A stretch of 63,901 nt of DNA, filler included, from Octopus bimaculoides (Eukaryota), in assembly GCF_001194135.2 (NCBI RefSeq). It is 6 parts of 6 records of this genome, joined end to end, with 100 filler letters (N's around TTAATTAATTAA, not from the genome) between each part and the next. Parts side by side here need not be neighbours in the genome. Positions count along the whole stretch, not along the records: positions 1 to 15,781 come from NC_068991.1; 5 more parts are not named here. One strand, 5' to 3'. Shown here in pieces: positions 1 to 15,606 of this stretch (position 1 is its first letter; each line of letters begins with the position of its first letter). Position numbers and translations under genes: made by a program. Under the pieces are notes generated by a model. That model made no database searches. It was not told the origin of the DNA and saw only the letters and a list, made by a program, of their open reading frames with translations.

Positions 1-642
1 AAAGGTATTTGATGCCCACTCTGAAACTCTGACAGACGAAGATTTGCTGGAATTAAAGTCTGCCAGCAAAGAGGAGGCAGAATTGCCAGATCCAAAGGAA
101 GAAGAGGATGAGGTAGGTCCAGCAATCGAATGTCTCTCTGGCCCTTTCAGGACAGCAAAGGAATTGCAAGAGAAGGCAGAAGCATGGGATCCCTATATGG
201 TTCGATCTCTCCAATTTAAAAATGCCATCGATGCTGCTATAAAACTCCTCACCACCATGAAAAAAAAAAAACAACCGCAACTTCTCATCACAATGTTCCT
301 CAAGTCCATCAAGAAAGCCTTGCACGAAGATACGACATCCCCTAAAACACATGAAGAAGAGGTGTCAACTGAAGTGCTTAAAATTTTCTTTGCTGTGCAG
401 TCATTACCTTTATTATTTTCATCATCATTGTCTTAAATCAATATCATTCATTATTGGTGAGTAACTGTACATTTTCCTTTATTTTTTATTAAATTGTTAT
501 TAAATATTTCATATATATATATATATATATAATTATTTACTTACGTTATATTTTGACATTTATAGGCATCTCTATGGACCACGTCCTGTATTAGCAGGTG
601 CTGTAGGAACCTAACCTCCATGAATACCGGGGGACTACTGTA
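1..642 (+). mobile_element. Tigger/pogo-like DNA transposon, 3' remnant (transposase C-terminus plus right TIR)
   Basis: Reading frame HSETLTDEDLLEL...AEAWDPYMVRSLQFKNAID...QLLITMFL resembles the C-terminal tail of Tigger/TIGD-type transposases. Ends ...CCGGGGGACTACTG-TA (627-642), the reverse complement of a TA-CAGTAGTCCCC Tigger-type TIR. Confidence 0.72.
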
Positions 643-663
643 TTACCAGGTAATTCAGCAAGT

Positions 664-1035
664 ATATGTATGAATGTATATATACATACATATGAATATA
701 CATATACATACACATATACAGTCACACATATATACAAACATACATACACACATATATACACATATAGTCACACATATATACACACACACATATATATACA
801 TACATACATATATATACACAATATATATACATATATATATATACACACACACACATATATACGCATATATATACATACACACACATATACACATACATAT
901 ATATACACACATATATATATACGTACATACACACAAATATATACATACATATACATACATATATATATATACATTCAGATACACACACATACATATATAT
1001 ATACATACGTACACACACACACATATATATATATG
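664..1035. repeat. Compound (TA)n/(CA)n microsatellite
   Basis: Direct inspection; the source of the spurious YIYI/HTHT ORFs. Confidence 0.95.
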
Positions 1036-1074
1036 GTGGTTGTCTACTTCTTATGCAGAGTTTGACCACCTCTT

Positions 1075-2030
1075 GTACTTACACCTTAGATCTATCATGG
1101 CATCTGATGTAGCTTTTTAAACTAGACAATGCATTGAAAAGACATCCACATAGATGGCATATCTGACTTGGACCACCATGAGTTGCAGTTAAGTTCTGAT
1201 CTTTATGGATTTTAAAATGTCTTTTGAGACTTCTATTAGATTTGCAGATCTTATGGCATACAAGGCATTGAAAAATGTGCAGAGTAATTGGTGGAGGTTT
1301 GTTTTTCATGGGTCTGCAAATGGGATTTGAACCCAGCAAAAGAAAGGCAAGGTCTGTCACATACTGTACATACAAGAAGTTCACTGAGATTCACCTTCTC
1401 ATTGATCACATTCTTCTTTAAATCTTTCTTGAGTCATGCATGTGTCATCCTGCCCTCCTCAAAAGCTTTCACTCCACTCCACTTTTGTTCGTCATCCTGC
1501 CCTCCTCAAAAGCTTTCACTCCACTCCACTTTTGTTCGCCATCCAGCTCAATCCAAAGCAAGGTTTTCTATGACCTTTGGGTCCATTCCAAGTGACTTCA
1601 TGGTAGTCCTTATGCTGTCCTCAAACCTCTTTTTAAGCTTACACCAATTGCGTTTTCTCTCCACAAGCTTGCCATAAAACGGCTGTTTGGGTGTGCGTTC
1701 ATTCGCCATATGAACTATATGGTCAGACCACCTCATTTGATTTTTCAGATTCATTGATTCAATTGAAGTGATACCTGCAGATGCAAAGACATCTATGGCT
1801 GGTGTAAAAAAGCTCCATTTAATGTTTAAAATACGGAGGAGGCAGTTTTGGTGAAATCGTTCTAACAATTTGAAACGTCTTTCATAACACATCCATGTTT
1901 CAGAGGAATACAACAGGGATGGTAAGACAAACGATTTGTAAAGAACCAATTTTGTGGTGTCATTTATATGTTGTTGGCACCTAATGCGTGACTCCAAACC
2001 ACCAAATGCTTGGTTGACCCTTTGAACTTG
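1075..2030 (-). mobile_element. RTE-clade LINE 3' remnant (end of RT plus C-terminal C2H2-like fingers)
   Basis: ORF 1548-1997: LYKSFVLPSLLYSSETW...LERFHQNCLLRIL.IKW...RWSDHIVHM...PKQ.FYG.L, typical of the RTE post-RT region. ORF 1079-1384 has CxxC...H fingers. Internal 47-bp tandem duplication at 1444-1490/1491-1537. Confidence 0.82.
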
Positions 2031-2194
2031 CAGATGTATATATATAATAATAATAATAATATAGATTTAATCAAAAGATTAAATGTGGTACTTAAAATGT
2101 TTGAGGCACCAGAATTTGGTAGGGTAAAAACCAAAAACAAAATCAAGAGATTTGGTGAATAAAATTTGAAGAAAAGCAACAAAAATTCAATAGG

Positions 2195-2291
2195 TTATAG
2201 CAGTACATACGTTTCGTACAAACTTCTTTTATTCATGTAGTGAGAACACTACATAAAATGTGCAATGAAAACGTACTCCTCAGCTGCATAA
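2195..2291 (-). ncRNA. Type I hammerhead ribozyme (PLE-associated)
   Basis: Minus strand: stem I UUAUGCAG/CUGC(U)AUAA; core CUGAGGA; stem II GUAC/GUAC capped by an AUGUAGUG-UUCU-CACUACAU hairpin; GAAA; stem III AC-GUAU-GU; cleavage triplet GUA (cut between 2204 and 2203). Folded by eye. Confidence 0.82.
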
Positions 2292-3244
2292 TGGGAATTT
2301 CATTTTAGAAAGTCATTTTGTAGATGTGTGCAAAAAACAAGAGTAAGAGAAGAAAAAATACCATCTTGACTNNNNNNNNNNNNNNNNNNNNNNNNNNNNN
2401 NNNNNNNNNNNNNNNNNNNNNNNNNNNNNNNNNNNNNNNNNNNNNNNNNNNNNNNNNNNNNNNNNNNNNNNNNNNNNNNNNNNNNNNNNNNNNNNNNNNN
2501 NNNNNNNNNNNNNNNNNNNNNNNNNNNNNNNNNNNNNNNNNNNNNNNNNNNNNNNNNNNNNNNNNNNNNNNNNNNNNNNNNNNNNNNNNNNNNNNNNNNN
2601 NNNNNNNNNNNNNNNNNNNNNNNNNNNNNNNNNNNNNNNNNNNNNNNNNNNNNNNNNNNNNNNNNNNNNNNNNNNNNNNNNNNNNNNNNNNNNNNNNNNN
2701 NNNNNNNNNNNNNNNNNNNNNNNNNNNNNNNNNNNNNNNNNNNNNNNNNNNNNNNNNNNNNNNNNNNNNNNNNATACATTAATGAGGGGTAGTAGAAGAG
2801 AGATATTATTTATAAGTAAAACCATAATATTAATGGCCAAAACCAGAACAAAGAGAAAGGTGGGGAAGACGGAGGAGGAAAAAAGGGGGAGGAATAAAGT
2901 TAGAAAAACAGGACTAAATTAAGAGAATTAAAGCTAAGGTTTTCGAAAAAGTAATATGGTAGAAGAGACTCAGAATTACCTAGAGAAATGTGGGAATATT
3001 ATCAGTGGGTTGGGAAAGGTTAAAATGTATTCTAAATTTATATTTAAAAGCTATAACTTAAATAAAGTAGTTAATAGTCAGGGAAATGAGAGGAATTAAA
3101 ATAATAAATTATTAGCAAGATTTACTTTTTTAAATATTTAAAGGTGCAAGAGTAACAATGTACACAGAGAATCCTAAGGTCAGATCTATTGTTAATTAGA
3201 TTAAGATTATCCTTAAGTTTAAAAATTTCATAAATTTCCATAGA

Positions 3245-4481
3245 TCACAGTCCACAGCCATATCTACTATCTCTATAGGGTTGTGCTCTCCTGACGATTT
3301 CCCATTTAAGATTAAAATCGATACCATTTTCCTTCAATTCCCAAATTGTATTAGATAATGATGTGCTATTGGCTTTATGATTAAGTCTAAACGAGGAAAA
3401 ATGATAGTATAATTGCAGTTTAAGGTTGATTGTGCAACCAACATAAATGTAATTATTAGTTGGAGTAGCTACTGTACATTTATAGACCACATTACGGGTT
3501 AAACAACGGCCAGATACCGGGCAGTGGGCTTTAATTCTACAATTGCAATTAAGGGTCTTATTAGCTATATATATATGTTGCTATGTTGATTATTGATACA
3601 AGTATCTAAATTGGTTATATCAACATTGCTGGTTGTATTACTGGATATGCAATTGATATTGTTTGAGCTAGGAAGATTTATCTCATCAACTATGTTAACA
3701 GTTGAAGTATTATTATGTTCATTAACATGTGCATGATTATTGGTTGCATTGGAGTTATTAATTGTTTGGTAGTTATTTGTATTGTTATCAATAATAAGAC
3801 AATTTTTATTTTCAAGGGTCCTAGCTAGTTCAATGTTCTTTGTATTTAACTTATTGATAATAGACCTTATATTGGGGAGAGTAGAGTATGAGATACAGAT
3901 AGTGTGTTGAGAGAAGATTTTATAATATCTATGGTTAGGGTCGAACATTTTTGTAAGATATCCATAAATTTCTTATAGATGTTTGTAGATACTGCATAGT
4001 TGTAAGGGATGTAAAGCCATATAGAATTTTTTCTTTTAAATTTGTAATATGAAGGGGGTTTGTGGTTATCATAAGTATTTGGGGTTATATTATTGCTTCT
4101 ACTATCATTTGTAGTTTTCTTATTGGGATCTATCTTGTTATGTAAAGTAATTTTCCTATTCTTATGGCCATTATTATAATTTCTTAATCTAGGTATTTTA
4201 TTGGTGTTAATATGGTTGTGTAGGCATTTATCAGGTTGTATTACATTTTTATTCCTATTGCTTAAGCAGGATAGGTTATTATTAGTAGGTCTTATCTTAC
4301 CATTATTTACGATAATTAAATTTTTATTATTGGTAACATTATTTAGGATAATTAGATTATCATTATTAGTATCATTATCATTATTGTTACTATCACATTT
4401 AATAGATTTACTAGGATTAAGGAAAGAAATTTTTTGGTCATAGCCCGCTCTACAAAATGACTTTCTAAAATGAAATTCCAT
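3245..4481 (-). pseudogene. PLE ORF remnant: post-RT linker plus GIY-YIG endonuclease, frameshifted, with Asn-rich inserts
   Basis: ORF-track segments 3867-4481, 3565-3948 and 3245-3490 carry consecutive PLE motifs in different frames. Confidence 0.85.
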
Positions 4482-4498
4482 TATGCAGCTGAGGAGTA
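4481..4498 (+). ncRNA. 5' half of a second hammerhead copy, cut off by the assembly gap
   Basis: TTATGCAG-CTGAGGA-GTA then N; identical to the start of the 2195-2291 motif, in the opposite orientation. Confidence 0.55.
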
Positions 4499-4598
4499 NN
4501 NNNNNNNNNNNNNNNNNNNNNNNNNNNNNNNNNNNNNNNNNNNNNNNNNNNNNNNNNNNNNNNNNNNNNNNNNNNNNNNNNNNNNNNNNNNNNNNNNN

Positions 4599-5953
4599 CT
4601 TTCACGCGTCCACCTTAACGCTCTGCACGCCCCGGAGACAATCGATCTTGAGCTGATCGCAGCAGATCAGGAAAACGACGAAGAGCTTAGTAGGCTACGG
4701 AATTCGTCGTCCCTCAAATTCCAGCTGTTACCATTATCTTCTACTTCTCATATATGATGTGATACATCCACTGGCCATGAACGTCCTTACGTCCCCGAAC
4801 AACACCGACGAAGTGTTTTCACTGCCCTTCACACCCCGGCATTCGTGCCACACAGAAGATAATAAGAACTCGTTTTGTGTGGACGAACGTTAACAAGGAC
4901 ATTCGCGCTTGGGTTGAGAGTTGCGCTGCCTGCCAAAAGGCGAAAATACAGCGACATGTAAAATCACCTCTCGGCACTTTCACAACACCGGACGCACGTT
5001 TTCAACACATCCACTTGGATATAGTCGGACCTCTACCACCCTCTCAAAACTATACACACCTCTTAACCTGCATCGACCGCTTTTCTCGATGGCCCGAGGT
5101 TTTCCCTCTGTCCGATATTTCAGCGGAAACTGTCGCTAAAGCGTTGATATCACACTGGGTATCGCGCTTTGGTGTCCCTGCGACCATCATGACAGACAGA
5201 GGACGGCAATTTGATTCGCGCCTTTTCAGTGAACTCACGCGCCTGATCGGTTCCAAGCACTGCCGCACAACAGCATATCACCCAGCGGCAAACGGCATGA
5301 TAGAGAGATTCCACAGGCAATTAAAAGCAGCCATACGTGCATGTCCAGATATAACCAACTGGATGGAATTCCTTCCTCTTATTCTGCTCGGTATCTGTAT
5401 ATCTGCTAAAGATGACATCGGTCACTCTCCGGCTGAGTTAGTTTACGGCACCACTCTGGCCCTGCCTGGGCAAATGATTGCTCCAGTTCCTCCAAGGGAT
5501 ATTCCTGATCCTACATTTTATGTACATCGTCTACGCGCACATATGTCCCATCTCTCACCTAACGCACCCCGTTCGCAGAAAACCGACACTTATGTTCCCT
5601 CAGACATTAACCAATGGACGCACATTTTTATCCGGAACGATGGAATACCATCGCAAATCCGTCCACCGTATTCTGGACCCTACAGAGTACTACAGAGAAA
5701 GGAAAAATACTTCCTCGTTGACAGAAATGGCAAGCCAAATACTATTAGTATTGATCGACTTAAGAAAGCTATCGTCGATCCCGAATTCTCCGCATCATCG
5801 TCCACTCCGAACAAAACCGACACAGTTTTGTCAAGACCTCCTGCAAGTACTTCAACGTCCTCACAGCACCCTCGAACAAAAATCGGACGAAGAGTCCGCT
5901 GGCCAGCGAAATACATACAAGTTTGCTGTTTCAAAAAGATTCCAGGTGAGTGA
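4599..5953 (+). mobile_element. Ty3/Gypsy LTR retrotransposon pol 3' part (integrase)
   Basis: HHCC zinc finger (H.GI.AT...[12 protein letters not shown]) and rve core ([11 protein letters not shown]...IDRFSRWPE...TDRGRQF...[17 protein letters not shown]), with a GPY motif and an RTKIGRRVR tail. A stop and a small deletion lie upstream of 4877. Confidence 0.93.
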
Positions 5954-6795
5954 TTTACAGGCACCAATGCTTTAATTTCCACACAAACAGCTACAAAATC
6001 TATTTATATATTTTTTTTCTTTCAACTGAATATTTTATTGATGAACTGAACATTTTATTGATGAACTGAACATTTTCATCATGAACAGAACATTTATTCA
6101 TAACCTGAATTTTTTGTCTGCATGCCTTCTCAATTTGATCCTTATTTTGCATGTACTATTCTTTTTCTTCTCGTTTGCTTTGAAAATACTTGTATTGTTG
6201 CACACACACCCGCATGCACCTTTTCCTCAGTGTCTGGCCAGGTACACGCATCTGCACACATGATTCATAAATACACAAATACTAACTCTGTCACATTCAT
6301 GCTCCACACATACCTTTCTCGCCTGTTTACACATGCTCTGCACTTATGTTTAGACATAATTTCCCTCCGTTAGACCCTTGTTTGGTCACGTAATTAACAG
6401 AGAAAATGATCTGTCTCGCACATCACTTCAGCATGCTTACACTGTCATCCCTGCTAACTCAGTAATTAACCACGACAACAGCACCAGACGCATTTCACAC
6501 ACTGCAACTCTGCAGGAAGATCTTTCATATCATGGATTAAGAATGCACCCACTCGCTCCCCTGAGCTCAATTTTGAAACGTGCCATTGCACTCCTGTATA
6601 CGCCCTCACGTGCCCATTTGCTGTACTGCCCAGTCACTGACTGCACACAAAGCGACACTGTCCAGTATACACTTCAACGATCCTCTCTCCTGATATGCAA
6701 AATTTCTCCTCAATCATTCCAGGGCATTTATCATACATTTCTTTGTTTCCTTTCTTCGTTCGCTTCCCTCCCAGGAAGCTTACTGGCGAGGAGAG

Positions 6796-7112
6796 TGATA
6801 TAGGAACCTGGCAGGCGTGAAGTGGATTCGATCCACTTTACCCATATTTGAATAGCTAGGCCGAAGCTGTCTCCACCACTTGACCCTTTTCTGACCTCTT
6901 CTACTCCATCTAGAATTGAGGTAAACAAGCTAAATCCTTTGCACTCACTGCCCTGCTTCATGGTTATATAAACAGGACACTCCAAGAAAACTTCCTCTTT
7001 TCTCTTTCTAGTGACCAGTGGTCACTTGACGTCTCATGGAGAATGATGCCTGGCTGATCAGCTACAACTTCGCAGAGGGAGAAATAACTTTACTGTCAGC
7101 CACTGTCAGACA
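6796..7112 (+). mobile_element. Candidate LTR of the upstream Gypsy element
   Basis: Purine tract GGCGAGGAGAG directly before TG (6796); ends ...GACA (7112); TATATAAA inside. No second LTR in the window to confirm. Confidence 0.35.
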
Positions 7113-7217
7113 CCGGCGCCCACATTATAACCCTACCATCTCTCCCTCTATACAGCTACTGCTATAAAAAAAAGGAACATACAGATACAGGCCTAAATTC
7201 TCAACCTCGAATGTTGT

Positions 7218-7395
7218 GACACGTAAAAGCACCCACTACACTCTCTGAGTGGTTGGCGTTAGGAAGGGCATCCAGCTGTAGAAACTCTGCCAAATCAGAC
7301 TGGAGCCTGGTGTTGCCATCCGGTTTCACCAGTCCTCAGTCAAATCGTCCAACCCATGCTAGCATGGAAAGCGGACGTTAAACGATGATGATGAT
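7218..7395 (+). mobile_element. RTE-type 3' tail element ending in (GAT)n
   Basis: GGCGTTAGGAAGGGCATCCAGC...GGACGTTAAACGATGATGATGAT; its reverse complement matches 17310-17412. Confidence 0.7.
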
Positions 7396-9946
7396 ATATA
7401 TACACACGCACACACATATATCTTCATCATCATTGAACATCTGCTTTCCTGCTGGCATGGCTTCAACGGTTTGGCTGGAACTGTTTAGCCAGAGGTCTGC
7501 ATCAGGTTCAAGTCTGATTTGGCATGGTTTCTACAGCTAGATACTTCTGTAGTTCTAGAAATTATTTGGCTTTAAGGGCAAGGTTATCAGCATAGAGGAG
7601 GTACCAGGGGTACCCATCATAAATTTGTCAGTCATTGCCTGGAGGACTATGATGAATATAGTTTGTCCCCCACCTTGACAATCGCTGATGGTGTGTTTAC
7701 ATCCCTGTAACTTAGCAGCTTGGCAAAAAGAGAGTGACAGAATAAGTACCAAGTGTTAGTAAAAAAATGTACCGGGGTTGACTTGATGCACTAACTTTCT
7801 TTAAGGTAGTGGTGCTCCAGCATGGCTTTAGTCTAATGACTAAAACACAAGATGAACAATATAGGGGGTGGGGTAGAATGAATAATTTCTGATTTTTTAC
7901 TATTTTCGTTTTATGCATTTGAAACTGTTACATTGGAAGTATTACACTGCCATTTTATACCATTGCATCATGTTTGGGAGTAAAAATTGGTCAGCATAGT
8001 TGTTGAAACTGAAAGAGTTTGAAACAGTGAAAGATAGATACATACATTTCAAGAAATTTTTCCTCAACATTGACCTGATCATAATTGAGGTTGCTAATAA
8101 AAGATGTTGATAATTTTTGGTGTTTGACAATCAATATCCTTTTCTCTTCTGGATTCCATGTCAATTTTTCCCCACACTAATGTGTGATTTGATAATTTTC
8201 AATTTTCAAAAACTTACAATTTTAAAAAAACTGGGGCAAAATGAATAATGACTAGCAATTTTTTCTCTTTAACGGCATAGTGCATAAATATATCGGGAAA
8301 ATAGCAACTCCAGCAGATCCTGAAGAAACAATAGAAAATATTTTATGTCGAGTCTTGTTCATTTCATATCATGTGTCATTTTTCCATGAATCTCTTTCAT
8401 TTGACCTAGATATTCAAAATTTTTGTTTCATTTCTGATTTTTATGATGTCTAAGGATGGATGTTGTGTATTAGTCTTTCTTCAAATTGTAATTCCGGAGA
8501 ATTGAAGAGGCAAATTTACCGTATCTCAGCTTACTCGTTTTTTCCCAGCTAAATTTATCTTTTATATGCATGCATATAACTGATAATTTTCTGAAATAGC
8601 GTTCTGAATAAGTTATAGTGATTTTAATGCATTTAGGGAACATCCTTTCTTTAACCGATATTGTTTTTGTAAAGATAGAACATTTGTGAAAATATATATT
8701 TTCTCAAAAGTTAAAAATCTAGTAAATCTTACTCACTCTGCCCCTACCCTGTATGTTTTCTTTTCTTTCTGAATAAATGTAGATACATGTATCAATGTGT
8801 ATATATATATGTGTGTAACAAGCCTAATCGTATTTATCTGCATTACATCTCTCTCTTTCTTTGTATGTGGGGGAGGGGTGTTAACAAAGCGCCGTATTGT
8901 TTTATCAATTTGTATCCTGTTGGGATTGGGAAGGGCAACTCACTTGAATAAGTAAAATTTACAGATTATTTATTAAACTTATCTCATAAAATAAAATTTT
9001 ACGCTTTCATTGTTTCAAAAATATTTAAAAAAAAGAAAAGAAAAGGAAACGTTTGGAATGTACTAGTGTTTTGGTATCTAACACTACTTTAGAGTTACAA
9101 ACAAAATTGTTAAATTTAATTAAAGATAACTCGCAGAGATGAATAGTTTACCTATTTCTAATAACGAAAACTATAAATGACTGTGATAATTCAAATTATG
9201 TGATTATATTAATATTTTTGGTGCAAGATAAACATTGACGATCGCCTAAACATCTATAAATCCGTTAGAATGAACACTCCCCTAAAAGTACCTCACTCTT
9301 GAACATGAAAAGACAATTGAAGCATTCAGTTTGTTAAGTTTTGTTCTATACAAATGATACAATTTCGATTTTAGGCTAAGTTGGTGAATGAAAAAAAAAC
9401 CGCACAGATTTGTACATCATTGGAGTAGAAAATGCATGACAGGTCATTTCTGGGATTTTGCTACCTCTGAAAATAACTTTTTACTGGTTTAAATGCTGTG
9501 TCTAAGAAAGAGAACGTGGTGCATTTAATTTTAAAATTGTTAAATGATTTACGATTCAAAACGATTTCTCGCAAAAGAATTATATTTCTATTACTCCTTT
9601 AAAGAATAATATGACATGAAAAAGCGGACTATTTAGAAAGCTGTCGTTTTCCAGCTGAACAATCACAACATCCGTAAACGATATAACCTGCTAAAGGCAA
9701 AGGATGAAATGGATTTAAAGTATATAAGCATTTTAAAGGACATCCTTTAAAACTCTCTGAATGCAGCGTTATTGATATGAAATTCAGTTTTAATATAGAG
9801 GAAGGTTCAAGTTTAATAAAGTAACAGCCAACACCCAGACTGTCATGACGAGACAATTTTACGCATCGCAGTCTTCCGGGGTGACATTTCACCAATCGAA
9901 GAATACTAATTTCGAAAATAGTCATCGAAAAATTACATAAACTTAC

Positions 9947-9994
9947 CCCCGTGCCATTATCACAAACTATCACTGAGCGTCCTTTGTTGTCCAT
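9947..9994 (-). CDS. ACTR2: Actin-related protein 2 (Arp2/3 complex subunit), first coding exon
   Basis: ATG...GGG gives MDNKGRSVIVCDNGTG, followed by a perfect GTAAGT donor (9946-9941). Matches the Arp2 N-terminus (human MDSQGRKVVVCDNGTG) rather than conventional actin (DNGSG). Confidence 0.9.
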
Positions 9995-10063: not shown

Positions 10064-10189
10064 ACACACCTCTAACAACCACCGGTTCCCACAATGCATT
10101 ACCAATAACTAGCGAAGGCCGATAACTGCCGATCCAAATATTCTTTTCTACTCTAGGCACAAGGCCAGAAATGTTTTTTTTTTTTTGGG

Positions 10190-10295: not shown

Positions 10296-10624
10296 NNNNN
10301 NNNNNNNNNNNNNNNNNNNNNNNNNNNNNNNNNNNNNNNNNNNNNNNNNNNNNNNNNNNNNNNNNNNNNNNNNNNNNNNNNNNNNNNNNNNNNNNNNNNN
10401 NNNNNNNNNNNNNNNNNNNNNNNNNNNNNNNNNNNNNNNNNNNNNNNNNNNNNNNNNNNNNNNNNNNNNNNNNNNNNNNNNNNNNNNNNNNNNNNNNNNN
10501 NNNNNNNNNNNNNNNNNNNNNNNNNNNNNNNNNNNNNNNNNNNNNNNNNNNNNNNNNNNNNNNNNNNNCGAATATGCAGTTATCGGCCTTCGCTAGTTAT
10601 TGTTAATGCATTCAACATTTTTAA

Positions 10625-10834
10625 CCCCACCACACTTTTAAATGCATTGTTTATCAAAGTGTGGAAATTTCATTAAAGCAAGTATGTAACGTGGAAGAAT
10701 GCTGGGATTTTAACAAAATCGAAACAACAATTTCTACAGTTTAGCTAAATGAACATCGAAAGTGCACTTTATATACCTGCTTTAATGAAATTTCCACACT
10801 TCAATATACAATACATTTAAATTTGGGGTGGAGG
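10625..10834. mobile_element. MITE with ~60-bp imperfect TIRs, TTAA flanks and CC...GG termini (piggyBac-like)
   Basis: Left TTAA-CCCCACCACACTTTAAATGCATTG...GTGTGGAAATTTCATTAAAGCAAGTAT is mirrored by ATACCTGCTTTAATGAAATTTCCACAC...GGGGTGGAGG-TTAA. Confidence 0.65.
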
Positions 10835-11699
10835 TTAAAACTTTGAAATTTTTTTCTTTTTTTTAGCATGTTCGTCATCTCCGACATGTGAAAATCTAGG
10901 AATCCGAATAAACTTTTTCAGAAAAATGCATTTTTCAAGGGGAGGTGCGAATCTGCATTAGCCCTCTTTGTTTTTCACTTTTTCGAAAACTTTTAGCAGA
11001 ACATTGTAGAAGAACATGGAAATTACAATTATGGGGAAAATTGTTTTAACATTTTATTTCTTTAAATCTTCCCCTTGCTCATCCAGCTTTTCGAATACCT
11101 ACCCCCATTACGCCTCCATACTAACATTACGGGTGTTTTTATAGTCGTCCGTTCAATTACGCATGCGTTTATACTTTTCCAACCAGCAGACGAAATGAGG
11201 GTGGCTTAAATGTGGACGTTCCACATGCTAGAAACGACAGCCAAATCATAGTTCTAGCCATGACATCATGTTCCATAAGTAGGTGATACTGTAAGGAAAT
11301 TTTGGGGATGTAACTTATAATGTGAGTAAAATTCTCAATATTAATTCAACAATGCACTAGTTGTTATCGAGACGGTTTATCTACATCTCTATACCTTTTG
11401 TGCATCATGTATTTTGTTATTTCCTGTTCGTTTATTGCAAAAGCATATCCTTCAAAGTGAGAGCTAATATCGTGATGGTTAGTCAAAAATAGACTACTTT
11501 GGTGATCGATGTTACTATCATTCTATTGTCATATTGCTGTGACACTCGATTTTTATGATGAGTATCAAGAAACTACTCTATTTTAGGTTAGTCAAGTAGT
11601 TGGCAATGTTGTTAATGATGTTCGTTCTTTTTTACATATATCAAAAGGTATGTTTGTTTTGTTTCAAATAATTTAATCACATGGTTATTGGTGTATGCG

Positions 11700-12031: not shown

Positions 12032-12858
12032 CTACTCCACTTCGAAGTCTGCCATCCAATCGGGAGGGCGCCTTACACGTCGAGATCTTCTCAAGCCAGG
12101 TGCCTTGTTTCCCTCTTCACGCTCTTCATCTGACGAAGTGGCTATCCTGCGCAGGTCCAGCACGTGACGCGGCATTCCATCCATGGATACATTTTTTCTG
12201 GAATTGACCGCTGTCACCGTTCCCCTGCCCCATTGCGACGTGCAGCATGCCTTTGGCGGCTTGACCCAAACTTCCTCTCCTACTTTCACACCGGCGGGTC
12301 CCTTCTCTTCCTCACAGTACTCCGGCGTCTTGCTGGGATGGCTCCATTCATACTTGAACACTGCTCTGTGCAGCACAAATTCTTTCACTTGTCCGGATCG
12401 GGGAGACATGTTATACCAGAAAACCACTTCCAGGGGCGAAATGTGCCCCCTTTCAGCCATGGCCTTGATCATCCGATGGTGCCTCTCTACGATTCCGTTG
12501 CCACTCGGCCTATACACTGCTCTGAACAATCGTCGCACCTTCCACGGGTCGAGCATCTCCCCAACACTTCCGAACGAAATGCCACCCCGTTGTCCATTAG
12601 AAGTTCTTCCACGGGACCCCTCTCCAAGAATATCTTGTTCAAAATCCGGGCGATCTCATCAGCAATGCCTGTCCTCAACTCCCTCCAAATGGCCAGCTGG
12701 CCCGGCCCGCAGTCGACCATGATGAGATACATTCCCTGACGGTAGTGCGTCACATCCACAGCTAGTCTCCTCCAGTTGCGCTCTACTGAGAGGTTCCTTT
12801 GTTCATGCCCACCCGGGGCGGGGTCAATAGACTGGCATCTGTCACAGTTCCCAACCAA
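12032..12858 (-). mobile_element. Ty3/Gypsy integrase remnant (frameshifted)
   Basis: CDRCQSIDP...WRRLAVDVTHY...VDCGP...LLMDNGVAFRS, then AVYRPSGNGIVERHHRMIK...LRRSRRVRRPPDW. Confidence 0.9.
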
Positions 12859-13089
12859 GCGTGTTTTTCTCTTTTTAATTTCGAATAAATTTTAACCAAC
12901 TACCTTATTGGTTGTGAAGGCAAGCATCTTGTTTTAACCATCATCCTTTAAATCTTAAGATCTTGCAGAATTTTAAAGTCGTGGTCATTAGTAGAGTATG
13001 AATTATATATGAATATATATATTGATTGTCAATATATCCTATATCCGAATAAGAAGCACACTCTAAAGTACAGAGCAGTAAACTATTAA

Positions 13090-13508
13090 AGTCTGGTCAT
13101 AGAGTTTCGCATCCACGAAAGCCGCAACTTTGAGGGTAGCTCATCAGACTCTATACAGAGACAAATTTAACTCTTCATTGGTCGGAGATGGGAGGATGTT
13201 ACGGTCAGTTGGTCGAAAGGTCATCAGAGGATTCTCCGTTCGCTGATTAAGCTCATCAGAATCCTTACGATCTGTTAGTAAGCCGGGAGATTGATCCCTA
13301 TTCCCCAAATTGGCTCGTCTAGGGGAGATAACCTGTGCTTACCAGCGCCGGAACTTTTTATCCTCTGATGACCTTTTGACTAATTGACAGTAACAACGTT
13401 CCGTCTCCGAGAGATGAGTTAGATTTGTCCTTGTATAGAGTCTGATCAACTGTCCACAATGTTACAGTTTCGTGGATGTGAAACCATTGATCAGCCTATA
13501 ACCAGACT
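13090..13508. mobile_element. Foldback/MITE-like element with ~150-bp imperfect inverted arms and TTAA flanks
   Basis: TTAA-AGTCTGGTCATAG...AGGTCATCAGAGGAT is mirrored by ATCCTCTGATGACC...CTATAACCAGACT-TTAA. AG...CT termini with TTAA fit Kolobok-type ends; the arms carry hammerhead-like cores. Confidence 0.75.
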
Positions 13509-13546
13509 TTAACATTAGTGCTTTAATATGAATATATATATATATA

Positions 13547-15558
13547 TTGGGTTGGCAACTAAGTTTCCGCCGTTTTTTTAAATTTTGGAATTTATTGCGG
13601 TTTTAAATTTTGGAATCTATTTTTTTGAGAATTCTATTTTTGAATCATTTTTTAATCTATTTTGTTTTTTTCTAGTTAATTTTTGTTTATTTTCAGATCA
13701 TTAAAATGGAACGTCAAGTTAAAAAAAACAAGCATTTTTGACACTTTCTNNNNNNNNNNNNNNNNNNNNNNNNNNNNNNNNNNNNNNNNNNNNNNNNNNN
13801 NNNNNNNNNNNNNNNNNNNNNNNNNNNNNNNNNNNNNNNNNNNNNNNNNNNNNNNNNNNNNNNNNNNNNNNNNNNNNNNNNNNNNNNNNNNNNNNNNNNN
13901 NNNNNNNNNNNNNNNNNNNNNNNNNNNNNNNNNNNNNNNNNNNNNNNNNNNNNNNNNNNNNNNNNNNNNNNNNNNNNNNNNNNNNNNNNNNNNNNNNNNN
14001 NNNNNNNNNNNNNNNNNNNNNNNNNNNNNNNNNNNNNNNNNNNNNNNNNNNNNNNNNNNNNNNNNNNNNNNNNNNNNNNNNNNNNNNNNNNNNNNNNNNN
14101 NNNNNNNNNNNNNNNNNNNNNNNNNNNNNNNNNNNNNNNNNNNNNNNNNNNNNNNNNNNNNNNNNNNNNNNNNNNNNNNNNNNNNNNNNNNNNNNNNNNN
14201 NNNNNNNNNNNNNNNNNNNNNNNNNNNNNNNNNNNNNNNNNNNNNNNNNNNNNNNNNNNNNNNNNNNNNNNNNNNNNNNNNNNNNNNNNNNNNNNNNNNN
14301 NNNNNNNNNNNNNNNNNNNNNNNNNNNNNNNNNNGTTGAAGAAGTGTTTCACGAGGTACAGTTCTAGGATTCGTGTATGAGCAGTTATAAAAACCCTGAT
14401 TTTCAGGAAACACTCCAGTGATCGTTGGACTGACACTCAAATCCACGACACTCACTCAAGTGATCGTTGGACTGTCACTCAAATCCACAACATTCAGTCA
14501 AGTGATCGTTGGGTTGCCATTCAAATCCACGACACTCACCCTCTTGAGTATCGGCTAATATCTATGCCATGTTCAATACTCAATTCCAACAATATTGAAT
14601 TGTTGTGAACTCTTGTAGCTAGAATGAAAGATTAGTTAGTATAATTTTTAAGTTGTAATTCTCTTCGACAAAATGACTTTATTTCTAATGGTTCTATAAA
14701 TGCTAAATGTACATAATAAACTAATGTAGAAATTTAATTCCTTTTACTTCTCGTTTCTTTCAACTTGTTGAATTTATTTCTGTATATTTATGAAACTATA
14801 TTTTTTTATGTGTAACGGTCAAAAGAATACGAATCTATATCTTCAACATACATGTAGGTATTGAACGCACGTTCAGCGTCTTGGTATGTATACATCATAA
14901 CATTTACACAGCCTAAACTAAGAGTTATGCTTAGTGATAAATACTTATAATTAAGTTATAAGTAACAAGATTATCATTATAGCTTTTAATTAAGAAGTAA
15001 TAATATTTGTTATAACTTACAATCGAAAACATTGTAAATAAAGATATAGTATTCACATCCCGACCTGTACAACATAAAAGAACCAAACAGTCAACGCGGA
15101 ACTCTATGTTCAACAGATGGAATGACTCAACACAGCTATTCAAGAGAAAAGACCTAATCGTCAGCATGGAGTTCTTCTGCTGTACAACAACGCCCGCCCT
15201 TATATCACCAATATGACCAAGGAAGCCATTCAAACGCATGGCTGGGAAGTGCTGCCACACTTGCTGTACTCTCCTGATTTGGCACCAATGGATTTCCATC
15301 TCTTTTGATCTCTTTCAAATACTATGTGCAGAGTTTCGTTCAATACTGACGCAGAATTGAGAGCTTGGTTGCATCAATTTTTCGAGTCGAAATCGGGTGA
15401 TTTCTACCAACGAGGTATTGAAAATCTTGTTGAACATTAGGAAAAAGTTGTAAACAACAAGGGTGAATACATTATTGATTAATTAGTTGTTATTTTTTAT
15501 TAAACCCTTTAAAAAATTTAAATTTTAAAAAATGGCGGGAACTTAGTTGCCAACCTAA
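13547..15558 (+). mobile_element. mariner DNA transposon, defective, both TIRs present
   Basis: TA-TTGGGTTGGCAACTAAGTTTCCGCC and GGCGGGAACTTAGTTGCCAACCTAA-TA. N-terminus MERQVKKNKHF at about 13706; C-terminus NNARPY...WEVLPHLLYSPDLAPMDFHLF...KGEYIID at about 15180-15480. An N gap lies inside. Confidence 0.88.
14418..14543. repeat. 42-bp minisatellite, about 3 copies
   Basis: GTGATCGTTGGACTGACACTCAAATCCACGACACTCACTCAA repeated at 14418, 14460 and 14502. Confidence 0.9.
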
Positions 15559-15570
15559 TATATATATATA

Positions 15571-15606
<36 letters not shown>

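What the first reader, a model, noticed from the sequence alone, without database searches (positions are those of the whole stretch)
2195..2291. Intact hammerhead ribozyme in the sense strand of the presumed Arp2 intron 1
Seen: every conserved type I core position is present on minus (CUGAGGA, G10.1-C11.1 stem II, GAAA, A15.1-U16.1, GUA triplet, stem I of 4 bp + bulge + 4 bp). Stem III (ACGUAUGU) is only 2 bp as a monomer but pairs at all 8 positions with a second copy (two G-U). Established: PLE pseudo-LTRs carry minimal hammerheads that cleave as dimers. Inference: Arp2 is transcribed on minus and no exon 2 is visible between 1 and 9946, so this motif would lie inside the pre-mRNA of a core cytoskeletal gene. 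It could cut nascent transcripts, or be kept quiet by needing a partner. The ~60-nt structured stem II insert is unusual for a minimal motif.
Basis: partly seen in the sequence, partly recalled or inferred. Interest (0 to 1): 0.75.

Follow-up and report, generated by a model that had tools for sequence, protein, structure and literature searches.

The report
Hammerhead ribozyme of a dead octopus retrotransposon
The hammerhead ribozyme motif is real, but it is the standard 3'-end ribozyme of a broken Penelope-like retrotransposon (Hydra clade) sitting in what is probably a long intron of an octopus Arp2 gene, so it is an ordinary transposon remnant, not a special feature of that gene.

Summary
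On the minus strand at 2291-2195 there is a complete type I hammerhead: CUGAGGA, a 5-bp stem II closed by G10.1-C11.1, GAAA, A15.1-U16.1, cleavage after A17 (2204), and a stem I of 4 bp, a bulge and 4 bp. Helix III is 2 bp inside the 8-nt self-complementary ACGUAUGU.

The motif is not chance. It lies about 0.8 kb downstream of a decayed GIY-YIG endonuclease ORF (4448-3116, minus) that carries the CxCX5C linker of Hydra-clade Penelope-like elements (PLEs). The element ends in a TA-rich microsatellite. An inverted, 5'-truncated second copy (4449-4498, plus) abuts it and runs into an assembly gap.

Related elements in Octopus sinensis and O. vulgaris have the same layout, with a homologous hammerhead at the same place. 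They also share the long helix II with an inner hairpin and the 8-nt palindromic helix III. A covariance model built only from those relatives picks 2190-2293 as the best hit in the window.

Rfam models miss this motif and all the relatives. Arp2 exon 1 (9994-9947) is real and no exon 2 lies in 1-9946, so an intronic, sense position is plausible but unproven.

The only partner copy in the window is antisense, so silence is more likely than cleavage. Verdict: new member of a known kind; low interest.

The parts
2195..2291 (-). Type I hammerhead ribozyme motif (copy A). Stem I 2291-2284 / 2203-2195; core CUGAGGA 2283-2277; stem II 2276-2272 / 2220-2216 with inner hairpin 2257-2232; GAAA 2215-2212; helix III 2212-2205; A17 = 2204.
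   Evidence: Sequence reading, descriptor scan, shuffles, constrained fold. A leave-one-out covariance model built from octopus relatives hits 2190-2293 at 18.8 bits, E about 0.014, the top hit in the window.
2035..2194 (-). 3' tail of the PLE after the hammerhead, ending in an (ATT)n(AT)n microsatellite at about 2065-2035.
   Evidence: Sequence. The tail is homologous to L001 7922-7978 (76.7% over 60 nt). The relatives also end in (TA)n about 160 nt after the hammerhead.
2292..2371 (-). PLE 3' untranslated region immediately upstream of the hammerhead, cut by assembly gap 2372-2773.
   Evidence: Positions 2274-2324 are repeated, inverted, at 4449-4498.
2774..3115 (-). PLE 3' untranslated region downstream of the endonuclease ORF, on the other side of the gap.
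   Evidence: Position relative to the ORF. In L001 the distance from ORF end to hammerhead is about 1.1 kb of continuous sequence.
3116..4448 (-). Decayed, 5'-truncated PLE ORF remnant. It holds an N-rich linker region, the CxCX5C motif (CNCRIKAHC from 3547) and the GIY-YIG endonuclease (about 3490-3248). It has at least two frameshifts, and a TGA at 3247-3245 replaces the second Cys of the CxxC motif.
   Evidence: Frame translations. Weak Pfam GIY-YIG match. 90% identity to an O. bimaculoides protein. 2592 HMMER relatives. tblastn against full-length relatives. Matches the Hydra-clade description in PMC8557442.
4449..4498 (+). Inverted, 5'-truncated second copy (copy B). It holds 32 nt of upstream sequence, the stem I 5' strand (4481-4488), CUGAGGA (4489-4495) and GUA, then runs into gap 4499-4598.
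   Evidence: blastn: 98% identity over 51 nt to the reverse complement of 2274-2324; sequence. P0002 shows that the ORF continues past 4448 in other copies, so 4448/4449 is a junction.
9947..9994 (-). Presumed Arp2 exon 1 (MDNKGRSVIVCDNGTG) followed by a GTAAGT donor. This is context, not part of the element.

Best explanation
The motif is the 3'-terminal hammerhead ribozyme of a dead, 5'-truncated Penelope-like retrotransposon of the Hydra clade. The host is an octopus genome, most likely Octopus bimaculoides.

The element lies on the minus strand from 4448 to about 2035. In order it holds an endonuclease ORF remnant, a 3' UTR interrupted by an assembly gap, the hammerhead, a tail of about 160 nt, and the TA-rich microsatellite that served as its target. 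A short inverted 5'-truncated copy abuts its 5' end (4449-4498 and on into the gap). This is the usual scar of PLE integration.

In the life of the element the ribozyme is thought to process element transcripts. Its 2-bp helix III with a self-complementary loop makes it efficient only when two sense copies pair (inferred from published work on PLE and amphibian hammerheads, not shown here).

At this locus the copy is a passenger in what is probably Arp2 intron 1. No sense partner is visible, and a complementary antisense copy lies 2.1 kb upstream in the same transcript. The most likely state is therefore an inactive ribozyme, possibly locked in a long intronic RNA duplex, with no effect on Arp2 (inferred).
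For: Motif and its statistics.

Second, inverted copy at a gap edge.

The ORF between the copies is a GIY-YIG endonuclease with a CxCX5C linker. Its closest protein is from O. bimaculoides at 90% identity. The family is large, with 2592 representatives, and its long members carry RT-like motifs followed by a C-terminal endonuclease.

The published diagnosis of the Hydra clade (PMC8557442) lists RWK, DKT, CxCX5C, no CCHH, CxxC/CxH, (TA)n targets and hammerheads present. The O. sinensis relative L001 meets these features in a 922-codon open frame. The window copy meets those of its surviving parts that I checked.

L001, L005, L006 and L007 show the same layout. A hammerhead lies about 1.1 kb after the ORF. 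(TA)n follows either about 160 nt or about 35 nt later. In L001 and L007 an inverted truncated copy with its own hammerhead lies next to the 5' end.

Structure is kept across families while sequence changes. 86.8% of cells are paired, against 22-49% when the partners are slid. Three pairs changed on both sides, including 10.1-11.1 G-C to A-U. Helix III is ACGUAUGU, ACAAUUGU or ACUCGAGU, each 8 of 8 self-complementary.

A covariance model built without the window sequence ranks 2190-2293 first in the window.

PLE insertions with adjacent inverted truncated copies, and the assembly trouble they cause, are described in PMC8557442.
Against: - Contiguity of ORF and hammerhead in the window is broken by the 402-N gap, so the link rests on the relatives.
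- Pfam and PDB sequence searches do not recognise a reverse transcriptase in the full-length relatives. The RT assignment therefore rests on short motifs and the published description.
- Rfam does not score the motif as a hammerhead.
- The hammerhead fold is 7 kcal/mol less stable than the best monomer fold.
- Covariation rests on only three families and eight sequences.
- No activity data exist for this or any related octopus copy.
Confidence: 0.85

Rival explanations
1. The unit is a non-autonomous retrozyme: a short hammerhead-bearing repeat mobilised by PLEs and usually tandem. It merely lies next to an unrelated PLE fragment, and further tandem copies are hidden in the gap.
For: The hammerhead sits 80 nt from an assembly gap and its second copy ends at another gap. 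That is typical of collapsed repeats. Animal retrozymes derive from PLE terminal repeats (abstracts listed).
Against: In gap-free relatives the homologous hammerhead is continuous with the PLE ORF and 3' UTR. No tandem copy is visible in the 337 nt of unit sequence. The second copy is inverted, as in PLE insertions.
Confidence: 0.07
2. The ribozyme is active at this site and cleaves nascent Arp2 pre-mRNA, acting as a brake or regulator of Arp2 expression.
For: All core nucleotides are intact and the motif is on the same strand as Arp2 exon 1. About a third of sister-family copies carry core mutations, whereas this copy has none.
Against: Single PLE-type motifs showed no detectable cleavage in vitro, and dimers only weak cleavage (PMC4209133). 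No reads began or ended at the presumptive hammerhead cleavage site of an active anole PLE (PMC11167929). No sense partner is present here. An antisense copy can pair with the core. The monomer prefers another fold. The host element is decayed. From memory: cleaving an intron with a hammerhead does not by itself block splicing (Dye, Gromak and Proudfoot 2006).
Confidence: 0.04
3. The inverted arrangement is an assembly artefact. The 1.7-kb contig 2774-4498 is placed in the wrong orientation, so the two hammerhead copies are really direct repeats (a pseudo-LTR pair) and the ORF lies on the other strand.
For: The contig is bounded by gaps on both sides and ends exactly inside the repeat. PLE structures are known to upset short-read assemblies.
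Against: The same inverted arrangement, with the hammerhead pointing away from the ORF 5' end, is seen without gaps in L001 and L007 from chromosome-level assemblies of two other octopus species. In the given orientation the ORF, hammerhead and TA-rich end are in the order seen in the relatives.
Confidence: 0.08
4. The motif is a chance match in AT-rich DNA.
For: The relaxed descriptor would hit by chance a few hundred times per gigabase (extrapolated from 0.0035 per 14.4 kb). Rfam is silent.
Against: A second copy is 98% identical. Homologous hammerheads sit at the same place in related elements of two other species, with compensatory changes. The leave-one-out model hits it.
Confidence: 0.01

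Closest known systems
Hammerheads of Hydra-clade and other endonuclease-positive Penelope-like elements (Craig et al. 2021, PMC8557442; Cervera and de la Pena 2014, PMC4209133)
   Same: Type I topology and location near the 3' end or terminal repeat of the element. The element has a C-terminal GIY-YIG endonuclease with a CxCX5C linker, inserts into (TA)n, and carries an adjacent inverted 5'-truncated copy. Helix III is very short with a self-complementary loop, which implies action as a dimer.
   Different: Helix II carries a 51-nt insert with a conserved inner hairpin. This feature is shared by the sister octopus family (45-nt insert with an inner hairpin). A third octopus family has a 32-nt insert that I did not fold. 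A marine Hydra-clade element, L004, has a 4-nt loop. The octopus ORFs are inflated by Asn-rich low-complexity runs, so the element is about 4.2 kb, not under 3 kb.
Dimeric type I hammerheads of amphibian satellite 2, Schistosoma Sm-alpha and metazoan non-LTR retrozymes (Cervera and de la Pena 2020, PMC7229834)
   Same: Type I topology. Helix III is 1-2 bp capped by a palindromic tetraloop. Activity is weak as a monomer and better as a dimer.
   Different: Those lie in tandem repeats of 150-450 bp and have a 4-bp helix II whose loop contacts loop 1. Here no tandem array is visible, and the helix II loop is too far from the core to make that contact.
[quoted passage not shown]
   Same: A hammerhead in the sense strand of an intron of a protein-coding gene, derived from a retroelement.
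   Different: HH9 and HH10 are conserved at orthologous sites across species and fold stably as monomers. This copy has no evidence of orthologous conservation, sits in a decayed transposon, and got no Rfam match at all.

Membership tests
Hammerhead ribozyme, type I | Conserved core: C3 U4 G5 A6 N7 G8 A9, G12 A13 A14, A15.1-U16.1, and H17 not G | tested here: met
   CUGAGGA at 2283-2277, GAAA at 2215-2212, A-U closing helix III, A17 at 2204.
Hammerhead ribozyme, type I | Three helices around the core, with helix I open-ended | tested here: met
   Stem I is 4 bp + bulge + 4 bp, stem II is 5 bp plus an extended hairpin, stem III is 2 bp. The constrained fold is -19.3 kcal/mol, but it is not the minimum-free-energy fold (-26.5).
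Hammerhead ribozyme, type I | Helices kept by compensatory change in homologues | tested here: met
   86.8% of cells are paired against 22-49% for slid partners. Three pairs changed on both sides. The model from relatives aligns all helices. The sample is small: three families.
Hammerhead ribozyme, type I | Reaches the score of an Rfam hammerhead covariance model (an operational test, not a defining feature) | tested here: not met
   No hit at gathering score, nor at E<=10. The homologous hammerheads of L001 and L005, and the short-helix-II motif of L004, are also missed. The test is therefore uninformative for this subclass.
Hammerhead ribozyme, type I | Site-specific self-cleavage | not testable with these tools
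   Needs in vitro transcription or RNA end mapping.
PLE-type dimeric hammerhead | Helix III of 1-2 bp capped by a self-complementary loop, so that two copies form an extended helix III | tested here: met
   ACGUAUGU pairs with itself at 8 of 8 positions. Sister families have ACAAUUGU and ACUCGAGU, also 8 of 8. Only 14% of random tetraloops would do this.
PLE-type dimeric hammerhead | Lies in the terminal repeat or 3' region of a Penelope-like element | tested here: met
   It lies downstream of the GIY-YIG ORF remnant in the window and is continuous with the ORF in L001, L005 and L007.
PLE-type dimeric hammerhead | A second sense copy nearby on the same transcript to act as dimer partner | tested here: not met
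   The only other copy in the window (4449-4498) is on the opposite strand. The gaps could hide more.
Hydra clade of Penelope-like elements (PMC8557442) | C-terminal GIY-YIG endonuclease preceded by a CxCX5C linker motif | tested here: met
   CNCRIKAHC followed by VVYK...YVG. Weak Pfam GIY-YIG match. The motif is conserved in the family alignment.
Hydra clade of Penelope-like elements (PMC8557442) | No conserved CCHH motif inside the endonuclease core; CxxC and CxH motifs after it | tested here: met
   The family consensus shows no conserved Cys within the core. CQLC and CIH are present in L001. In the window the CxxC reads CGL-stop.
Hydra clade of Penelope-like elements (PMC8557442) | RT part with an RWK motif and DKT in place of DKG | tested here: inconclusive
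   The window copy is truncated before the RT. The O. sinensis relative L001 has RRIRWK, PADKTG and YRDD. Pfam and PDB searches do not recognise an RT domain in the family.
Hydra clade of Penelope-like elements (PMC8557442) | Insertion into (TA)n microsatellites | tested here: met
   The window element ends in (ATT)n(AT)n at about 2065-2035. The relatives end in (TA)n.

The most novel reading that the evidence does not exclude
Octopus Hydra-clade PLEs carry a distinct hammerhead subclass. Its long helix II, with a conserved inner hairpin, would be a functional module: either a binding platform for the element's own protein, or a substitute for the loop 1-loop 2 contact that lets the ribozyme work in a new way. 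At this locus the inverted pair of copies would form a long intronic RNA duplex in Arp2 pre-mRNA, which in an octopus would be a natural ADAR editing substrate.
Probability: 0.1. Interest if true: 0.45.

Novelty: new member of a known kind. Interest (0 to 1): 0.2.

Why it matters
It matters little for Arp2 biology. This is a transposon remnant of a kind already known to be massively abundant in invertebrate genomes.

There are two modest points of value:
- Cephalopod Hydra-clade PLEs and their hammerheads have a long, structured helix II that standard Rfam models miss entirely, so they are probably under-annotated in cephalopod genomes.
- RefSeq names fragments of these ORFs 'myelin gene regulatory factor-like A' and 'myb-like protein D'. 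These look like misannotations caused by Asn-rich low-complexity runs.

Tried and rejected
- **Rfam.** Scans at gathering score and at permissive E-values found no hammerhead in the window or in the relatives. The hits in the relatives were microsatellite-driven miRNA look-alikes.
- **Contig look-ups.** Exact look-ups failed for the window integrase ORF and for the two O. bimaculoides-like proteins P0001 and P0002. No second O. bimaculoides copy could be fetched.
- **Short Logan contigs.** L002 and L003 end before the hammerhead position.
- **TIR idea.** I first considered that the two inverted copies were terminal inverted repeats of a DNA transposon carrying a lone GIY-YIG gene. I rejected this for two reasons. 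P0002 shows that the ORF continues beyond the junction at 4448. Full-length relatives carry RT-like motifs upstream.
- **LINE idea.** I also considered that the hammerhead belongs to the LINE-like fragment just downstream (2030-1070). I rejected this because the LINE-like ORF begins after the TA-rich end of the PLE tail.
- **RT recognition.** Pfam and PDB sequence searches did not recognise an RT in the family.

Full report
**1. The observation**

Reading the minus strand of 2300-2190 shows the motif exactly as described:
- a stem I 5' strand;
- CUGAGGA;
- GUACG, then a 51-nt insert, then UGUAC;
- GAAA;
- C-GUAU-G, then U and A17;
- a stem I 3' strand with one bulged U.

A descriptor scan that I wrote required CUGANGA, a stem II of at least 3 bp, GAAA, a stem III of at least 2 bp closed by A-U, H17, and a stem I of at least 4 bp. 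On both strands of the window it found this site and nothing else.

In 2000 dinucleotide-preserving shuffles of the window the relaxed descriptor hit 0.0035 times per shuffle. A stricter version never hit. That is rare for one window, but over a gigabase genome it would still allow some hundreds of chance hits. Statistics alone therefore do not settle the matter.

Rfam gave no hammerhead match at gathering score, nor at E<=10 in a 481-nt slice. The monomer's minimum-free-energy fold is not the hammerhead: -26.5 kcal/mol against -19.3 for the hammerhead-constrained fold.

**2. A second, inverted copy and the ORF between the copies**

A sensitive self-comparison showed that 2274-2324 is repeated at 98% identity, in inverted orientation, at 4449-4498. 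That copy contains the stem I 5' strand, CUGAGGA and GUA, and then runs straight into the 100-N gap.

Between the two copies, on the minus strand, lies a decayed reading frame. It spans three frames and has a TGA in place of a cysteine codon. Its end reads CNCRIKAHC...VVYKC...YIYVGCT and gives a weak Pfam GIY-YIG match.

Its closest database protein is an uncharacterised Octopus bimaculoides protein at 90% identity, so the window is almost certainly from that species or a close relative. A second hit, P0002, continues upstream of the point where the window ORF meets the inverted copy. Position 4448/4449 is therefore a truncation junction and not a natural end.

**3. The ORF belongs to a Hydra-clade Penelope-like element**

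An exhaustive HMMER search with the 100-residue endonuclease part found 2592 representatives. Most are fragments, but a few are about 720 residues long with the endonuclease at the C-terminus. These long members carry RT-like motifs...KDHK..., D..FYPSI, MG..DGAE, YRDDG.

Craig et al. 2021 describe a 'Hydra' clade of Penelope-like elements with these properties (PMC8557442):
- found in Cnidaria, Mollusca, Echinodermata and Arthropoda;
- a single ORF with a C-terminal GIY-YIG lacking the CCHH motif;
- a CxCX5C linker;
- RWK and DKT motifs;
- CxxC and CxH motifs after the endonuclease core;
- insertion into (TA)n;
- readily detected hammerheads.

The window copy shows CxCX5C, no conserved CCHH in the endonuclease core and the remnant of the CxxC motif. 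It ends in an (ATT)n(AT)n tract at about 2065-2035.

**4. Relatives with the same layout**

The protein P0003 led to a 13-kb locus of Octopus sinensis, L001. L001 holds a 922-codon open frame with RRIRWK, PADKTG, YRDD, CNCRIKSKC, CQLC and CIH. This frame aligns over almost its whole length to the full-length marine relative P0059.

About 1.1 kb after the ORF there is a type I hammerhead (7803-7868). About 160 nt further on, a (TA)n tract begins. Abutting the 5' end of the element is an inverted, 5'-truncated copy with its own hammerhead (3707-3629).

Further copies of the same family lie in L005 (O. sinensis) and in L006 and L007 (O. vulgaris). Two of these copies carry inactivating core changes, G12 to A and G8 to U, and one copy has a 13-nt deletion in helix II. 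That pattern is what neutral decay of individual transposon copies would produce.

A third family's hammerhead (L007 79132-79190) sits beside another PLE RT fragment and is also followed by a TA-rich tract.

The tail of the window unit is recognisably homologous to the L001 tail.

PLE insertions with an adjacent inverted truncated copy, and the trouble they cause short-read assemblers, are described in the same paper. That fits the two gaps here.

**5. Is the hammerhead fold conserved?**

An alignment of the window motif with seven octopus relatives gave these counts:
- 86.8% of cells are paired for the hammerhead helices, against 22-49% when the 3' partners are slid by 1-3 columns.
- Three pairs changed on both sides. 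One of them is the 10.1-11.1 pair, which is G-C in the window and the third family and A-U in the sister family.

Helix III is ACGUAUGU, ACAAUUGU or ACUCGAGU in the three families. Each pairs fully with itself, whereas only 14% of random tetraloops would allow that. This speaks for selection on the dimer form at the family level.

The long helix II is also shared. The sister family has a 45-nt insert with a 7-bp inner hairpin of entirely different sequence. The third family has a 32-nt insert. A marine Hydra-clade element (L004) has only a tetraloop.

I then built a covariance model from the six O. sinensis and O. vulgaris copies alone and ran it over the whole window with filters off. It placed 2190-2293 (minus) first at 18.8 bits and E about 0.014, aligning the core, all three helices and the inner hairpin. 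The next hit had E = 0.85. The E-values are rough.

Rfam also missed every one of the relatives, so its silence on the window says nothing.

**6. The Arp2 context**

Positions 9994-9947 encode MDNKGRSVIVCDNGTG followed by GTAAGT.

No further Arp2 similarity exists in 1-9946. The two gaps in between are each flanked by transposon sequence: PLE 3' UTR on both sides of the first gap, and the PLE inverted copy plus LTR-element pol around the second. A hidden exon is therefore unlikely.

Exon 2 was nevertheless never seen, and the orientation of contig 1-2371 relative to the exon 1 contig rests on scaffolding. I could not fetch the octopus Arp2 gene.

**7. How it most likely works here**

Established from the literature:
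- PLE-type hammerheads with a minimal helix III show no detectable cleavage as single motifs, and weak cleavage as dimers (PMC4209133).
- In an active anole PLE the ribozyme was dispensable for target-primed reverse transcription in vitro, and no reads began or ended at its presumptive cleavage site (PMC11167929).

Shown here:
- The only second copy is inverted.
- In a minus-strand transcript its complement can pair with the ribozyme's 5' half at -79.6 kcal/mol over the 50 visible nucleotides. The hammerhead fold is worth -19.3 kcal/mol.

Inferred: the copy is a silent passenger. Even occasional cleavage inside a long intron would probably be tolerated. I recall exon tethering (Dye et al. 2006) from memory for that last point.

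**8. Verdict**

The finding is a correct observation of an ordinary object. It is a new member, in an octopus, of the known class of PLE hammerheads. It has a lineage-specific long helix II that deserves a line in an annotation paper but not more.

Noticed in passing
window 1070-2030 (-), tail 650-1065: A 5'-truncated LINE-like fragment lies directly after the PLE's TA-rich end. It reads ...LLYSSETW...RFHQNCLLRILNIKW...PKQPFYGKL..., then a C2H2-like finger ORF at 1384-1079, and ends in a long (CATA/TA)n microsatellite. Pfam gave only a weak zf-C2H2 hit. The LINE assignment is from memory of CR1/L2-type ORF2 C-termini.
   Followed up: partly
window 1444-1537: A perfect 47-nt tandem duplication (two identical copies) lies inside the LINE-like fragment.
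   Followed up: no
window 4599-5953 (+): LTR-retrotransposon pol remnant. The integrase has Pfam rve (E = 3.6e-14) and Integrase_H2C2 matches. It starts right after the 100-N gap that swallows the inverted hammerhead copy.
   Followed up: partly
window 12035-12891 (-): Two overlapping frames look like a second, frameshifted integrase (…MDNGVAFRSE…, …GIVERHHRMIK…). Pfam reports nothing.
   Followed up: partly
window 13526-15579: A mariner/Tc1-like element is bounded by 60-nt inverted repeats that are 92% complementary (13526-13585 / 15520-15579). It has a transposase remnant...YNNARPYIT...GWEVLPHLLYSPDLAPMDFHLF, at 15126-15305 and an internal 585-N gap. Pfam gave no hit on the 60-aa piece. The assignment is by eye.
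   Followed up: partly
window 14411-14539: Three tandem copies of a 42-nt unit (87-89% identity) lie inside the mariner-like element.
   Followed up: no
window 10093-10129 / 10576-10612, 10611-10693 / 10765-10847, 13119-13232 / 13360-13470, 7270-7323 / 7489-7542: Several medium-length inverted repeats (37-83 nt, 78-97% complementary), possibly MITE-like hairpins. One pair flanks the gap just upstream of Arp2 exon 1.
   Followed up: no
L001 3587-3809, L006 8665-8888, L007 5096-5279, compared with L001 7701-8030, L005 8757-9082, L007 8672-8997: The octopus PLE family has two alternative 3' ends. A short form meets (TA)n about 35 nt after the hammerhead (both inverted copies and L006). A long form runs about 125 nt further. 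This recalls the optional PLE 'tail' explained by two reverse-transcription start sites in PMC11167929, but the difference here is longer.
   Followed up: partly
P0003 and P0153 (O. sinensis), P0154 and P0155 (O. vulgaris): Gene models made from the Asn-rich part of this PLE ORF are named 'myelin gene regulatory factor-like A' and 'myb-like protein D' in NCBI. These are probably misannotations driven by low-complexity sequence.
   Followed up: no
L004 about 2405-2470: A complete 2.6-kb Hydra-clade PLE sits on a Tara Oceans scaffold. It has a hammerhead-like motif with a short helix II (tetraloop UAAC), a 7-bp stem I and a 3-bp helix III, but an A-A opposition at 10.1/11.1. Its terminal sequence is repeated at both scaffold ends and it ends in (TA)n.
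   Followed up: partly
window 2196-2190, L001 7875-7881, L007 79198-79204; window about 2105-2097: Short sequence blocks after the hammerhead are shared. AAC(U/C)(A/U)AU directly after stem I occurs in all three octopus families. UGGUGCCUC lies about 100 nt further on in the window and L001 families, and reads GGCGUGCCUC in the third family. These may be signals for the element's own machinery.
   Followed up: no
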